Source: Octopus sinensis (lineage: Eukaryota). From it: a stretch of 64,000 bases of DNA. Where the stretch lies: the NCBI RefSeq assembly GCF_006345805.1, contig NC_043012.1, forward strand, positions 52,700,001-52,764,000. Reading direction: 5' to 3'. Under the pieces are notes generated by a model, which worked only from the letters and a program-made list of their open reading frames with translations, was not told where the DNA came from and made no database searches. Made by a program: the position numbers and the translations under genes. Shown here one piece after another: positions 11,150 to 43,412 of this stretch; position 1 is the stretch's first letter, and each line of letters begins with the position of its first letter.

Positions 11150-11331
11150 TGTATTTATGTATGAGCACACCAATACACACACACACACCGATAAATAAGC
11201 ACATGTATTTTTATATACAAGTCACGTTTACATACGTACATTCATGTGTGTGTGTGTGCGCGCGCGCGTGTGTGTGTATGTGTGTGTTTGGACGAGTAAT
11301 TTTCTCCTCTACTATTTGAAAATTCACACAC
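11150..11331 (+). repeat. Left arm of a ~180-bp inverted repeat (partner 12238-12408)
   Basis: GAGCACACCAA..CCGATAAAT..CAAGTCACGTTTACATACGTACATTCATG..TTTGGACGAGTAATTTTCTCCT matches the reverse complement of 12238-12408. Confidence 0.9.
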
Positions 11332-12237: not shown

Positions 12238-12408
12238 GTGTGTAAATTTTCAAATAGGAAAGGAGAAAATTACTCGTCCAAACACACACACACACGCGCG
12301 TACACTCACACACACATGAATGTACGTATGTAAACGTGACTTGTATATAAAATACATGTGCATATTTATCGGTGTGTGTGTGTGTTGGTGTGCTCATACG
12401 TAAATACA
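12238..12408 (-). repeat. Right arm of the ~180-bp inverted repeat
   Basis: Reverse complement of 11150-11331; it abuts the hammerhead-containing direct repeat. Confidence 0.9.
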
Positions 12409-12460
12409 GTGATGGGGCACGTGTTATCTTGTCTCTGAATTATAAGTTAGTTGTTTAGGC

Positions 12461-12571
12461 CGGTTACTGACGAGAATTCGCCTGGTAGATAATATGGTCT
12501 TGCTAAATTATCTATTAAAAGATGGCAAGCAATATTATTTGCTAAAGAAATTCGAAACCATGGTATAACCG
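12461..12571 (+). ncRNA. Type I hammerhead ribozyme HHR1 (predicted cleavage after 12565)
   Basis: CGGTTA(12461-66) CTGACGA(12467-73) GAATT...AATTC(12549-53) GAAA C-CATG-GT A(12565) TAACCG. The core is perfect, with a 6-bp stem I, 5-bp stem II base and palindromic stem III ACCATGGT. Confidence 0.85.
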
Positions 12572-12952
12572 TTATATAACAAAGTAAAGGTTTTTATTTT
12601 TCATTTACTTCGAAATTTGCTATAAAATTGTGGGTTTTGGCCGTGTTCGGCTGCTATTTCTAGCATGTAAAAATTATTGTTAAAGGATAATTTTCTATTT
12701 TGAAATACGAATATGTTGTCTATTGACTTTTTATACATGCTAGACCACTGGTGGTGATATTTATAACGAGTATTCGCCACCCTATATATATATGTACCTT
12801 ATGAATATGTTCTTAGCATTCTCGAAGTTTCAGCTCGGCATTGTACCCATTGCTGACTGTAAATGCGCCTGCGCGCGATATTTGAAAAATTATAGCATAT
12901 AATGATGGGAAAGTGTTATCTTGCCTCTGAATTATAAGTTAGTTGCTTAGGC

Positions 12953-13063
12953 CGGTTACTGACGAGAATTCGCCTGGTAGATAATATGGTCTTGCTAAAT
13001 TATCTATTAAAAGATGGCAAGCAATATTATTTGCTAAAGAAATTCGAAACGATGGTATAACCG
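12953..13063 (+). ncRNA. Type I hammerhead ribozyme HHR2 (predicted cleavage after 13057)
   Basis: Same as HHR1 except stem III reads ACGATGGT; core CTGACGA 12959-65 and GAAA 13046-49 are intact. Confidence 0.8.
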
Positions 13064-13192
13064 TTATATAACAAGGTAAAGGTTTTTTATTTTTCATTTA
13101 CTTCGAAATTTGCTATAAAATTGTGGTTTTTGGCCGTGCTTGGCTGCTATTTCTAGCATGTAAAAATTACTTGTTAAAGGGTTATTTTGAAA

Positions 13193-13249
<57 letters not shown>

Positions 13250-18830: not shown

Positions 18831-19382
18831 AACAGAAAGATTATTTGTGGAGTTTTATAGCATACTAGCAAATGCACTCGTCCTTTGGACTGTTTAAGTT
18901 GCTTTGGTGGTATTTTTTTTTACCAAATAATTGAACTGCCGAGAAGGTTTATGAGTAGCACGGCAATCTATGTTTCCGATTAACCTAGGAACAGAAAACC
19001 AAATCGAAGGCTGGTTATAGTGGAGGTCGTTACACTTTAATGATCATAGAACATACAAGTTTGCAAGTGATGCAAAGTAGAACTACTGAAGTAGCATCCT
19101 TAAAGTGAAAAAACGCATTTGGTAGGTAAACAAAGGTATCAACAAATAGAAGAGAGGGAAGCGAACATCACCTTCCAAGTAACTCAGAATAGTTTAATGT
19201 CCAAGTTTAATGCAGTTTAAGTATGGAGATTAAGATTGTTTGGTATTGGATATTCATCGTGTACAGTGTTCCAAGTCAATTTAATAACCGTCGCAAGTGG
19301 ACAGTCGAAATAAATAGACAAAATCCTTTCCCTTTTATAATATTTTCTAACCAAGTAATAATATACAATTACAGAATATTCT

Positions 19383-19745
19383 TTACTCTTTTACTTGTTT
19401 CAGTCATTTGACTGTGGCCATGCTGGAACACCGCCTTTATTCGATCGAGCAAATCGACCCCAGGACTTATTCTTTGTAAGCCTAGTACTTATTCGATCGG
19501 TGTTTTTTGCCGAACCGCTAAGTTACGGGGACGTAAACACGCTAGCATCGGTTGTCAAGTGATGTTGGGGGACAAACACAGACACACAAACAGATATATA
19601 TATATATATATATATATACGACGAGCTTCTTTCAATTTCCGCCTTGGTCGACCCGACGCTATAGTAGAAGACAATTGTCCAAGGTGACACGCAGTGGGAC
19701 TGAACCTAGAACCGTGTGGTCCGTAAGCAAGCTACTTGCCACATA
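19383..19745 (-). mobile_element. SINE family B with internal deletion
   Basis: Tail, microsatellite and head are present; a segment near 19640 is missing. Confidence 0.8.
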
Positions 19746-43007: not shown

Positions 43008-43412
43008 CGCAGGAGTGGCTGTGTGGTAAGTAGCTTGCTTACCAACCACATGGTTCCAGGTTCAGTCCCACTGCGTAGCACCTTGGGCAAGTGACTTCTA
43101 CTATACCCTCAGGCTGAACAAAGCCTTGTGAGTGGATTTGGTAGACGTAAACTGAAAGAAGCCCGTCGTATATATGTATATATATGTATGTATGTGTGTA
43201 TATGTTTGTGTGTCTGTGATTCTCCCCTTTACATCGCTTGACAACCGATACTGGTATGTTTACGTCACCGTAACTTAGCGGTTCGGCAAAAGAGACCGAT
43301 AGAATAAGTACTAAGCTTACAAAGAATAAGTCCTGGGTCGGTTTGCTCGACTAAAGGCGGTGCTCCAGCATGGCCACAGTCAAATGACTGAAACAAGTAT
43401 AAGAGTAAAAGA
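43008..43412 (+). mobile_element. SINE family B, preceded by an inverted B fragment (42885-42965)
   Basis: Full head-to-tail match to family B. Confidence 0.88.

What the first reader, a model, noticed from the sequence alone, without database searches (positions are those of the whole stretch)
12410..13194. Twin hammerhead ribozymes in a 492-bp-period non-coding repeat: candidate retrozyme / circRNA-producing element
Seen in sequence: two ~290-bp direct repeats separated by ~200 bp of unique non-coding DNA. Each contains a type I hammerhead with all core nucleotides (CUGACGA, GAAA, GUA), a 6-bp stem I (CGGUUA/UAACCG) and a stem II base (GAAUU/AAUUC). Stem II encloses two further hairpins (UAGAUAAU/AUUAUCUA and AGCAA/UUGCU). 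Stem III is a self-complementary ACCAUGGU in copy 1 and has one change in copy 2. Established: type I hammerheads with palindromic stem III are typical of Penelope-like element pLTRs and cleave as dimers, and tandem-hammerhead non-LTR retrozymes in metazoans yield circular RNAs. Inference: a read-through transcript cut after 12565 and after 13057 would release a 492-nt monomer that could circularise and be mobilised in trans. The branched stem II and the monomer size look atypical for the minimal motifs I recall.
Basis: partly seen in the sequence, partly recalled or inferred. Interest (0 to 1): 0.92.

Follow-up and report, generated by a model that had tools for sequence, protein, structure and literature searches.

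The report
Hammerhead retrozyme insertion, 1.6 units
This is a young, non-coding copy of a small mobile element whose 492-base unit carries a well-formed self-cutting hammerhead RNA motif; it is a new (apparently cephalopod) example of the already described animal "retrozymes", and its cutting and circle formation remain untested.

Summary
Window 12408-13194 holds 1.6 head-to-tail units of a 492-bp repeat (units 95% alike). Each unit has a complete type I hammerhead, with predicted cleavage after 12565 and 13057. A strict descriptor finds only these two sites in the 64-kb window and none in 200 shuffles.

It is one copy of a dispersed family (about 1,245 first-look candidates in this 2.7-Gb genome). 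In 81 arms at 47 loci:
- 3' ends fall at two to three UA-rich unit positions, usually abutting genomic (TA)n.
- 5' ends are scattered.
- 27% of arms run through the unit junction.
- 67% have an inverted, 5'-truncated partner.

This is retrotransposition of the Penelope-like type. Helix II pair 10.2-11.2 covaries (A-U/G-C). Sister families keep the core and use three different palindromic helix III sequences, which points to dimer-dependent cleavage. The long helix II arose from a roughly 40-nt insertion into a short-helix ancestor; Rfam models miss both forms.

Not shown: cleavage, transcription, circles, and the autonomous partner. A LINE partner was tested and found unlikely.

Verdict: a new member of the known non-LTR retrozyme class with an unusual helix II. 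Earlier follow-ups of this scan described the same family at other places in this genome.

The parts
12408..13194 (+). The whole insertion. It comprises the last ~7 nt of one unit, one full 492-nt unit, and the first ~288 nt (to unit position ~293) of the next, about 1.6 units in all.
   Evidence: The 5' end is a truncation point. The 3' end (TTTTGAAATA, unit position 293) is one of the family's recurrent 3' ends.
12415..12906 (+). Full repeat unit, used as the reference. Unit position 1 is window 12415.
   Evidence: It matches up to 96% to copies on many chromosomes.
12907..13194 (+). Second, 3'-truncated unit, 95.4% identical to the first.
12461..12571 (+). Hammerhead 1. Stem I 12461-12466 / 12566-12571; core CUGACGA 12467-12473; helix II 12474-12553; GAA 12554-12556; helix III 12557-12564; predicted cleavage between 12565 and 12566.
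   Evidence: The ribozyme-compatible fold lies 2.3 kcal/mol above the MFE (-24.8 against -27.1).
12953..13063 (+). Hammerhead 2. Same anatomy with a complete core. Helix III reads ACGAUGGU (one C-to-G change). Predicted cleavage between 13057 and 13058.
12483..12544 (+). Distal extension of helix II (62 nt), beyond a conserved internal loop (GCC / AAAG). It folds either as a ~24-bp imperfect rod or as two hairpins. The same segment in copy 2 is 12975-13036.
   Evidence: Comparison with short-helix sister families.
12557..12564 (+). Self-complementary helix III octamer ACCAUGGU. As a monomer it forms 2 bp plus a CAUG loop. Between two ribozymes it forms an 8-bp helix.
   Evidence: the dimer cofold is -68.2 against 2 x -27.1 kcal/mol, with an intermolecular helix III; sister families use CCUAGG, CCUAUAGG or CCAUGG, all palindromic.
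12698..12714 (+). Internal UA-rich site (unit positions ~284-300) where about a third of the family's 3' ends lie. The window copy ends at the same site in its second unit (13185-13194).
12783..12808 (+). Internal (UA)n-rich site (unit positions 369-394) where about half of the family's 3' ends lie.
13195..13247 (.). Genomic (TA)n microsatellite that abuts the 3' end. It is the presumed target and priming site.
   Evidence: A (TA)n run of at least 4 repeats follows 52 of 81 family 3' ends.

Best explanation
Window 12408-13194 is one moderately young insertion of a non-autonomous, non-coding retroelement of the animal non-LTR retrozyme kind. Its two units differ by about 4.6%.

Proposed life cycle:
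- The 492-nt unit carries a type I hammerhead.
- Helix III is too short to be stable in a single ribozyme (2 bp plus a palindromic tetraloop). It is self-complementary, so two ribozymes on a multimeric transcript can pair through it and cut.
- A host RNA ligase could close this RNA into a circle.
- A reverse transcriptase supplied in trans then copies uncut or re-closed RNA. Synthesis is primed from nicked (TA)n microsatellite DNA annealed to UA-rich tracts of the RNA (unit positions ~293-300 and ~369-394).
- Going round the template gives more than one unit. Early stops give 5' truncation. Priming on the second DNA strand gives the inverted partner.

What is shown here:
- the motif itself;
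- its maintenance in the family;
- the fixed 3' ends, scattered 5' ends, junction-crossing and inverted-arm architecture;
- the origin of the long helix II.

What is inferred:
- self-cleavage;
- dimer dependence;
- circularisation;
- that the enzyme is a Penelope-like element's RT/GIY-YIG protein (about 0.6 likely);
- that this particular copy is or ever was transcribed.
For: Motif:
- Complete core and three helices in both units.
- Only these 2 descriptor hits in the window and 0 in 200 shuffles.

Family:
- 91 scored matches among 1,245 first-look candidates, 82-100% identical, on most chromosomes.

Architecture, from 81 arms at 47 independent loci:
- 72 of 81 3' ends fall in unit bins 280-309 or 370-399.
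- 52 of 81 are followed at once by (TA)n of at least 4 repeats.
- 5' starts are spread over the whole unit.
- 22 of 81 arms cross the 492-to-1 junction (up to 2.1 units).
- 54 of 81 have an oppositely oriented partner at the 5' end.
- These are the features listed for Penelope-like insertions (PMC8557442).

Ribozyme maintenance:
- Helices I, II-base and III are 96.3% paired in 29 copies, and 0 of 500 shuffles reach this.
- Pair 10.2-11.2 is A-U in 19 copies and G-C in 8; pair 10.1-11.1 is G-C in 17 and G-U in 11.
- By eye, most of the 65 short-helix and 55 long-helix exact-pattern relatives (controls 0) pair GAGGAUU with AAUC[U/C]GAAA and GAGAAUU with AAUU[U/C]GAAA. They use three palindromic helix III versions.

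Structure predictions:
- The dimer is predicted 14 kcal/mol more stable than two monomers, through an intermolecular 8-bp helix III.
- The 492-nt monomer folded as a circle gives -127.5 kcal/mol, 66% paired, z = -4.4.

Other:
- No ORF of 60 aa or more; GC 33.5%.
- The family, including the unit junction, appears in contigs of four runs from three studies.
- The class is described in PMC7229834, PMC4209133 and 10.64898/2026.07.22.740005.
Against: - No Rfam hammerhead model matches, even at E<=10, because helix II is about 80 nt instead of about 12. Activity with such a helix II is untested.
- Only one clearly compensatory pair exists within the family, and it probably reflects a single event inherited by a subfamily.
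- The runs that hold the family are only guessed to be RNA and are kept as contigs. Transcription, RNA ends and circles are therefore not shown.
- No autonomous element sharing sequence with this family was found.
- An abundant APE-type LINE in the same genome also lands in (TA)n: 12 of 16 copies by my count of the flanks printed. The target preference therefore does not identify the enzyme.
- Copy 2 has lost the helix III palindrome.
- Nothing indicates a promoter at this locus.
Confidence: 0.8

Rival explanations
1. The element is what is described above, but it is mobilised by the abundant APE-type LINE of this genome (as a SINE-like passenger) rather than by a Penelope-like element.
For: - A sister-family copy lies directly after the 3' tail of a 5'-truncated LINE copy with no microsatellite between them (L082).
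- Short LINE-tail fragments lie within 500 bp of 4 of the ~47 family loci.
- The LINE also lands in (TA)n: 12 of 16 copies, by my count of the flanks printed.
- Inverted partners can arise by twin priming, which is known for LINE-1 (my own knowledge).
- PMC7229834 names LINEs as well as PLEs as candidate mobilisers.
Against: - 16 of 17 LINE copies end in a 75-nt 3' UTR plus an (ATAAA)n-like tail, with no hammerhead and no similarity to the unit's 3' ends.
- 67% of arms have an inverted partner and 27% are partial tandems. This matches the description of Penelope-like insertions (PMC8557442) and, from my own knowledge, is well above what I recall for LINE-1 twin priming.
- Short palindromic helix III hammerheads are typical of PLE terminal repeats (PMC4209133).
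- Co-location in (TA)n can explain the adjacency.
Confidence: 0.2
2. This particular locus is an active gene for a 492-nt circular RNA: a read-through transcript is cut at both ribozymes and the monomer is circularised.
For: - Both cores are intact and 492 nt apart.
- The dimer fold is favourable even with copy 2's changed helix III (-64.2 kcal/mol).
- Family sequences with the unit junction occur in contigs of possibly-RNA runs.
Against: - The dominant contig variant in those runs is another subfamily (G-C at 10.2-11.2, 15-23 differences from this locus), not this copy.
- The copy is 5'-truncated and about 2.3% per unit from its source.
- No promoter evidence exists.
- A junction read is colinear with the genomic tandem, so it cannot prove a circle.
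Confidence: 0.15
3. It is an ordinary satellite or local tandem duplication, and the hammerhead is a decaying relic with no role in spread.
For: Tandem arrangement. Most substitutions among copies look like neutral decay; the core is about 3% changed against about 6% overall, which is not a clear difference.
Against: - Copies are dispersed on most chromosomes in different flanks.
- They have fixed 3' ends, random 5' ends and inverted arms.
- Subfamilies and sister families differ by pair-preserving changes and keep the core and a palindromic helix III.
Confidence: 0.03

Closest known systems
Metazoan non-LTR retrozymes (Cervera & de la Pena 2020, PMC7229834; Li, Clavereau & Pollet 2026, bioRxiv 10.64898/2026.07.22.740005)
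   Same: - A type I hammerhead in every unit.
- Short, AT-rich, non-coding units in dimers to multimers, dispersed in the genome.
- No LTR, PBS or PPT.
- A strongly self-paired predicted circle.
- Coexistence with Penelope-like elements.
   Different: - The unit of 492 bp is above the 150-450 bp first reported, though inside the 51-972 bp of the 2026 survey.
- Helix II is about 80 nt, against about 4 bp plus a loop.
- Cephalopods are not among the species treated in the passages I searched; the 2020 paper holds neither 'octopus' nor 'cephalopod'.
- RNA circles are not shown here.
Hammerheads of Penelope-like element terminal repeats, and the PLE insertion architecture (Cervera & de la Pena 2014, PMC4209133; Craig et al. 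2021, PMC8557442)
   Same: - Type I topology with a short palindromic helix III, implying dimeric action.
- 5' truncation, partial tandems, and an inverted 5'-truncated copy at the 5' end.
- (TA)n insertion bias.
   Different: - There is no RT/GIY-YIG ORF in or next to the element.
- Helix I is full length (6 bp plus a distal closing stem) rather than the 4-5 bp of minimal PLE hammerheads.
- This genome's own abundant minimal hammerheads (GUAC-CUGAAGAG...) have a different sequence.
- Homology to a PLE terminal repeat was not tested.
Newt/axolotl satellite-2 hammerheads and the Schistosoma Sm-alpha SINE-like hammerhead repeats (Epstein & Gall 1987; Forster et al. 1988; Ferbeyre et al. 1998; recalled from my own knowledge, and summarised in PMC7229834)
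   Same: - Repeats of about 330-350 bp, each with a type I hammerhead.
- A weak helix III of 1-2 bp with a palindromic tetraloop.
- Efficient cutting only as a double hammerhead in multimeric transcripts.
   Different: - A different phylum and an unrelated sequence.
- Those ribozymes have a short helix II capped by a loop that contacts loop 1. Here the candidate contact surface is an internal loop 6 bp from the core, and the distal part is a long duplicated hairpin module.
Plant LTR retrozymes (Cervera et al. 2016, PMC4918200)
   Same: A non-autonomous retroelement whose hammerheads delimit an RNA that circularises and serves as a transposition intermediate.
   Different: Plant elements have type III hammerheads inside ~350-bp LTRs, with PBS and PPT and 4-bp TSDs. 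They depend on Gypsy and yield 600-1000 nt circles.

Membership tests
Type I hammerhead ribozyme (metazoan 'canonical' form as defined in PMC4209133) | Conserved core: C3 U4 G5 A6 N7 G8 A9, G12 A13 A14, the A15.1-U16.1 pair, and H17 before the cleavage site | tested here: met
   Both copies have every position. The descriptor hits are 12461-12571 and 12953-13063 only, with 0 hits in 200 shuffles.
Type I hammerhead ribozyme (metazoan 'canonical' form as defined in PMC4209133) | Open-ended helix I of about 6 bp | tested here: met
   CGGUUA/UAACCG, 96% paired in 29 copies. A distal closing stem is predicted.
Type I hammerhead ribozyme (metazoan 'canonical' form as defined in PMC4209133) | Helix II of about 4 bp capped by a loop that contacts loop 1 | tested here: not met
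   Helix II is 5-6 bp, then an internal loop (GCC/AAAG), then a 62-nt extension. Tertiary contacts cannot be judged from sequence.
Type I hammerhead ribozyme (metazoan 'canonical' form as defined in PMC4209133) | Helix III of 1-2 bp with a 2-4 nt palindromic loop (dimer-competent) | tested here: met
   A-U and C-G pairs plus a CAUG loop, within the self-complementary octamer ACCAUGGU. The dimer cofold forms it intermolecularly. Sister families have CCUAGG and CCUAUAGG.
Type I hammerhead ribozyme (metazoan 'canonical' form as defined in PMC4209133) | Match to Rfam Hammerhead_1 (RF00163) or another hammerhead covariance model | tested here: not met
   No hammerhead match at gathering score or at E<=10 for the long form. 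The one short-form copy held, which has a C3-to-G change, also gave no match.
Type I hammerhead ribozyme (metazoan 'canonical' form as defined in PMC4209133) | Site-specific Mg2+-dependent self-cleavage | not testable with these tools
   This needs in vitro transcription of monomer and dimer constructs.
Non-LTR retrozyme (PMC7229834) | Short AT-rich non-coding unit with one type I hammerhead, found as dimers to multimers at many loci, without LTR, PBS or PPT | tested here: met
   492-bp unit, GC 33.5%, no ORF of 60 aa or more. 1,245 first-look candidates; arms of 0.1 to 2.1 units at 47 loci.
Non-LTR retrozyme (PMC7229834) | [quoted passage not shown] | tested here: inconclusive
   The family and the unit junction are present in Logan contigs of 4 runs from 3 studies. 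The runs are only guessed to be RNA, and contigs show neither ends nor circles.
Non-LTR retrozyme (PMC7229834) | Highly self-paired monomer RNA | tested here: met
   The circular fold of 12566-13057 gives -127.5 kcal/mol, 66% paired, z = -4.4 against 100 dinucleotide shuffles. This is a prediction only.
Non-autonomous derivative of a Penelope-like element | Insertion architecture: frequent 5' truncation, partial tandems, an inverted 5'-truncated copy at the 5' end, and microsatellite targets (PMC8557442) | tested here: met
   Scattered 5' starts; 22 of 81 arms cross the unit junction; 54 of 81 have an inverted partner; 52 of 81 3' ends sit on (TA)n. The (TA)n preference is shared by a LINE and so does not discriminate.
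Non-autonomous derivative of a Penelope-like element | Sequence homology of the unit to the terminal repeat of an autonomous RT/GIY-YIG element of the same genome | not tested
   GIY-YIG frames of up to 883 aa are abundant: 149 matches of 150 scored among 5,029 first-look candidates.
LINE-dependent SINE (3'-tail sharing) | The 3' end is shared with the partner LINE | tested here: not met
   The LINE's 3' UTR is about 75 nt and ends in an (ATAAA)n-like tail. It has no similarity to the unit's 3' ends. Only 1 of 17 LINE copies is followed by a hammerhead element.

The most novel reading that the evidence does not exclude
Two readings remain possible.

(1) The duplicated hairpin module in helix II offers two mutually exclusive folds, a ~24-bp rod or two local hairpins. 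Together with the dimer-only helix III, it could act as a conformational switch. The ribozyme would cut in nascent multimers and stay silent in the finished circle. This would be a concrete answer to the open question raised in PMC7229834 of how retrozyme circles escape self-linearisation. The excess of 5' ends at unit positions 153-167 (11 of 81 against 2.5 expected), just after the cleavage site at 151/152, would then be a genomic footprint of in vivo cleavage.

(2) The family may be copied by the (TA)n-targeting APE-LINE rather than by a Penelope-like element. That would be the first LINE-driven retrozyme.
Probability: 0.15. Interest if true: 0.55.

Novelty: new member of a known kind. Interest (0 to 1): 0.3.

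Why it matters
It extends ribozyme-bearing retrozymes to a cephalopod-like genome that is rich in Penelope-like elements and (TA)n microsatellites.

Three points make this family useful:
- A hammerhead lineage tolerated a ~40-nt insertion in helix II. Current covariance models are blind to both the short and the long forms, so such elements are probably under-counted in genome annotations.
- The fixed UA-rich 3' ends abutting (TA)n give a testable model for how the template is primed.
- The three palindromic helix III versions are natural evidence for dimer-dependent cutting.

None of this changes the known picture of retrozymes. The locus itself is probably an inert copy.

Tried and rejected
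1. Rfam. The whole window at gathering score, and the region and the ribozyme alone at E<=10, gave only chance miRNA/snoRNA-like hits. The same held for a short-helix sister copy.

2. 'The hammerhead is part of a LINE 3' UTR'.
- This was suggested by L082, where a sister copy directly follows an APE+RT frame.
- It was rejected because 16 other LINE copies end in a 75-nt UTR without it.

3. The search for the autonomous partner failed.
- Flanks of 20 classical minimal hammerheads held no RT/EN ORF.
- A GIY-YIG motif scan of all DNA held found nothing.
- Coordinates of 149 GIY-YIG matches were never within 100 kb of the listed hammerhead copies. These are small samples compared by eye.
I did not work around this.

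4. Searching with the 3' module alone returned only the same family.

5. Rod versus branched helix II. Neither model exceeds its shuffles (186 of 500 and 45 of 500). Positional homology with short-helix relatives favours the rod's outer 8 bp, but this was judged by eye.

6. The similarity of the helix II spacer to unit positions ~255-285 is not significant within this copy. It is clear only in another subfamily (18 of 19 nt, against window 13164-13182).

7. Reads. Only Logan contigs of runs guessed to be RNA were available, so they give no ends, no strand and no proof of transcription.

8. The 5'-end cluster at unit positions 153-167 may record ribozyme-cut templates. It also coincides with the palindrome GUUAUAUAAC, where inverted arms can meet, so it is not counted as evidence of cleavage.
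Full report
**Observation**

- Window 12415-12906 is a 492-bp unit. It is followed by a second, partial unit at 12907-13194.
- The repeat finder gives two blocks at spacings 492 and 493, with 96% and 95% identity. The pairwise alignment gives 94% mean column identity.
- Homology actually starts about 7 nt earlier, at TGATGGG, the end of the preceding unit. It stops at TTTTGAAATA (13185-13194), which runs into a (TA)n tract.
- Each unit contains, on the + strand, CGGUUA-CUGACGA-[helix II]-GAAA-CCAUGG-UA followed by UAACCG. This is a type I hammerhead with every core position, a G10.1-C11.1 pair and an A15.1-U16.1 pair, and GUA before the scissile bond.
- The predicted cuts after 12565 and 13057 are 492 nt apart.
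- A descriptor I wrote required an exact core, 6/6 helix I, a 5/5 helix II base and a closed helix III. It finds these two sites and nothing else on either strand of the 64-kb window, and nothing in 200 dinucleotide-preserving shuffles.
- Rfam finds no hammerhead at its gathering score, nor at E<=10 when given only the ribozyme. The reason is visible: about 80 nt lie between CUGACGA and GAAA.

**What it belongs to**

The window comes from a 2.72-Gb, 13,516-contig eukaryotic genome rich in (TA)n and (GT)n. Earlier notes of this scan call it an octopus; I did not verify the species.

The unit is a dispersed repeat. There are 1,245 first-look candidates, of which the 91 scored matches are 82-100% identical and lie on most chromosomes.

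I mapped the unit onto 47 independent loci, giving 81 arms. The pattern is that of a retroelement, not a satellite:
- 72 of 81 3' ends fall in three narrow places: unit positions about 290-300, 370-382 and 394.
- All three places are UA-rich, and 52 of 81 3' ends are followed immediately by genomic (TA)n of at least four repeats.
- 5' starts are scattered over the whole unit.
- 22 arms run through the 492-to-1 junction, the longest for 2.1 units.
- 54 arms have an oppositely oriented, 5'-truncated partner joined at the 5' end.

The window copy (5' start at unit position ~486, 3' end at unit position 293, then (TA)n) is the second longest arm in this sample.

Frequent 5' truncation, partial tandems, an inverted 5'-truncated copy at the 5' end and a (TA)n bias are the features listed for Penelope-like element insertions (PMC8557442). 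Units with type I hammerheads arranged in tandem are what Cervera & de la Pena (PMC7229834) named non-LTR retrozymes. Li et al. (10.64898/2026.07.22.740005) argue that these derive from Penelope-like terminal repeats.

**Is the ribozyme maintained?**

Within the family (29 copies, alignment A2):
- The 14 pairs of helices I, II-base and III are 96.3% paired, and none of 500 shuffles reaches this.
- Pair 10.2-11.2 is A-U in 19 copies and G-C in 8. Pair 10.1-11.1 is G-C in 17 and G-U in 11.
- This is probably one inherited event, so on its own it is thin evidence.

Stronger evidence comes from relatives found with a pattern that fixes only helix I, the core and the start of helix III:
- There are 65 short-helix II copies and 55 long-helix II copies, against 0 for the reversed-pattern control.
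- By eye, most of these copies pair GAGGAUU with AAUC[U/C]GAAA and GAGAAUU with AAUU[U/C]GAAA.
- The distal hairpin changes by pair-preserving steps (UAGCAAAU/AUUUGCUA, UAGUAAAU/AUUUACUA, UGGCAGAU/AUUUGCUA).
- Helix III occurs in three main versions, CCUAGG, CCUAUAGG and CCAUGG. All three are self-complementary. The non-palindromic versions are single decayed copies.

Keeping self-complementarity while the sequence changes is what selection for a double hammerhead predicts.
- RNAcofold of two copies gives -68.2 kcal/mol against 2 x -27.1 kcal/mol for two monomers, with an intermolecular 8-bp helix III.
- A monomer forced into the ribozyme fold lies only 2.3 kcal/mol above its MFE.
- This matches the published definition of metazoan type I hammerheads: helix I of 6 bp, and helix III of 1-2 bp with a 2-4 nt palindromic loop, active as dimers (PMC4209133).
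- It matches in everything except helix II.

**The unusual helix II**

All relatives share a 5-6-bp proximal helix II followed by an internal loop (GCC opposite AAAG or AAAA). In the short forms an 8-bp hairpin with a 6-7-nt loop follows.

The closest short form (last row) is identical to the window's ribozyme in helix II base, internal loop and helix III, and has a single hairpin. The long forms are about 40 nt longer. In one subfamily (the row at C12:22322282) the extra piece has two parts:
- a ~20-nt spacer that matches the unit's own sequence further downstream (18 of 19 nt against window 13164-13182);
- a second copy of the hairpin.

The long helix II therefore arose by an internal duplication or template switch in a short-helix ancestor. 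In the window's subfamily it has since diverged.

The copies do not discriminate between the models. Since the insertion lies beyond the conserved internal loop, which sits 6 bp from the core where loop 2 normally sits, it need not disturb a helix I-helix II contact. That is an inference.

**How it most likely works**

- Multimeric transcripts are cut where two ribozymes pair through helix III.
- The unit-length RNA is closed by a host ligase, as shown for other retrozymes with RtcB in PMC7229834.
- A trans-acting RT copies RNA in which the ribozyme site is intact. Every arm that contains a whole hammerhead must have been copied from uncut or re-ligated RNA.
- Priming comes from nicked (TA)n DNA annealed to the RNA's UA-rich tracts. 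This explains several alternative 3' ends and none at the cleavage site.
- The predicted circle of 12566-13057 is strongly structured: -127.5 kcal/mol, 66% paired, z = -4.4.
- 5' starts are enriched just after the cleavage site: 11 of 81 lie at unit positions 153-167 against 2.5 expected. This could record run-off on ribozyme-cut templates. The same spot holds the palindrome GUUAUAUAAC, where inverted arms can meet, so I do not count it as evidence.

**Which enzyme?**

I tested a LINE hypothesis. A sister copy in L082 sits directly after an APE+RT frame (RVT_1, E = 4.5e-23). But 16 further copies of that very abundant LINE end in a 75-nt UTR with an (ATAAA)n-like tail and have no hammerhead, so the hammerhead is not part of the LINE. 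That LINE also lands in (TA)n: 12 of 16 copies, by my count of the flanks printed. Its tail fragments lie near four family loci. Co-targeting of microsatellites therefore explains the adjacency, and the target preference alone cannot name the enzyme.

GIY-YIG frames of Penelope type are abundant, with open frames of up to 883 aa and many of exactly 781 aa. On architecture and ribozyme type I put Penelope-like mobilisation at about 0.6 and the LINE at about 0.2.

**Expression**

Only Logan contigs of runs guessed to be RNA were available.
- They contain the family, including the 12906-to-12418 junction, in four runs from three studies.
- One 471-nt contig covers almost a whole permuted unit.
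- The dominant variant is the G-C subfamily, not this locus.
- Depth peaks at 12585-12618 and 12704-12770 reflect segments shared with the more abundant sister families.

This shows presence, not transcription, ends or circles.

**Comparison and verdict**

The element works like, and by the tested features is a member of, the animal non-LTR retrozymes. Its hammerhead fails two formal tests of the canonical type I family (helix II size and the Rfam model) but meets all the others.

It is a new member of a known kind with a variant helix II. Eight follow-ups of this scan listed describe units of about 349-505 nt with Penelope-style ends elsewhere in this genome, five of them at 484-493 nt as here. 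One of them also notes the long second stem. My independent analysis agrees with these.

The specific locus is most likely an inert copy. Its two units differ by 4.6%, and copy 2 has lost the helix III palindrome.

Noticed in passing
window 11150-11330 and 12238-12408: There is an inverted duplication of microsatellite-rich sequence: arms of 37-79 nt, 84-97% complementary, about 1 kb apart (pairs I1, I2, I20 and I24). Its right arm ends exactly where the retrozyme's 5' end begins. It could be a foldback or other element, or flanking DNA copied in inverted orientation when the insertion was resolved.
   Followed up: no
L082:1902-4676 (G000:C2:174843401-174846175); tail fragments at window 19378-19438 (-) and 43353-43402 (+): A very abundant APE+RT LINE: 32,872 first-look candidates, open frames up to 980 aa, 87-95% identical C-termini. 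It has a 75-nt 3' UTR ending in (ATAAA)n-like repeats. By my count of the flanks printed, 12 of 16 copies are followed by (TA)n.
   Followed up: partly
G000, e.g. C13:29988995-29989039 (L031) and other rows: A different, classical minimal hammerhead (GUAC-CUGAAGAG-ACCC..GGGUC-GAAA-CAUGUG-UU-GUAC) passes the Rfam RF00163 cut-off at 8 sites and is probably very numerous. A few copies carry ~60-nt insertions in loop 2 (L038, L047).
   Followed up: partly
G000, rows; L082:4786-5125; L081: Sister families of about 340-nt elements with the same hammerhead but a single helix II hairpin. A 29-mer of their 3' part occurs 807 times (up to 3 mismatches). They align to unit positions 121-382 at 71-84% identity. 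They are probably the source of the depth peaks at 12585-12618 and 12704-12770.
   Followed up: partly
G000, rows (e.g. C6:12733272-12733535 and C6:12759897-12760160): 149 GIY-YIG matches of Penelope type were scored among 5,029 first-look candidates. Eight have open frames of exactly 781 aa (seven with an identical score of 31.4 bits), suggesting a young, possibly active Penelope-like family.
   Followed up: no
L010:1279-1375; L004:1973-2040; L027:958-1031; L013:2279-2328: Short LINE 3'-tail fragments lie in the same (TA)n microsatellites as retrozyme arms at 4 of ~47 loci. (TA)n tracts appear to be shared landing sites for several retroelement families.
   Followed up: partly
L002:1199-2451 (G000:C17, about 56712626-56713878): The longest arm seen (2.1 units) has units that are 95%, 88% and 82% identical to the window unit. 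The units of one insertion therefore differ much more than expected from rolling-circle copying of a single circle. This may indicate template switching between different RNAs or a heterogeneous multimeric template.
   Followed up: no
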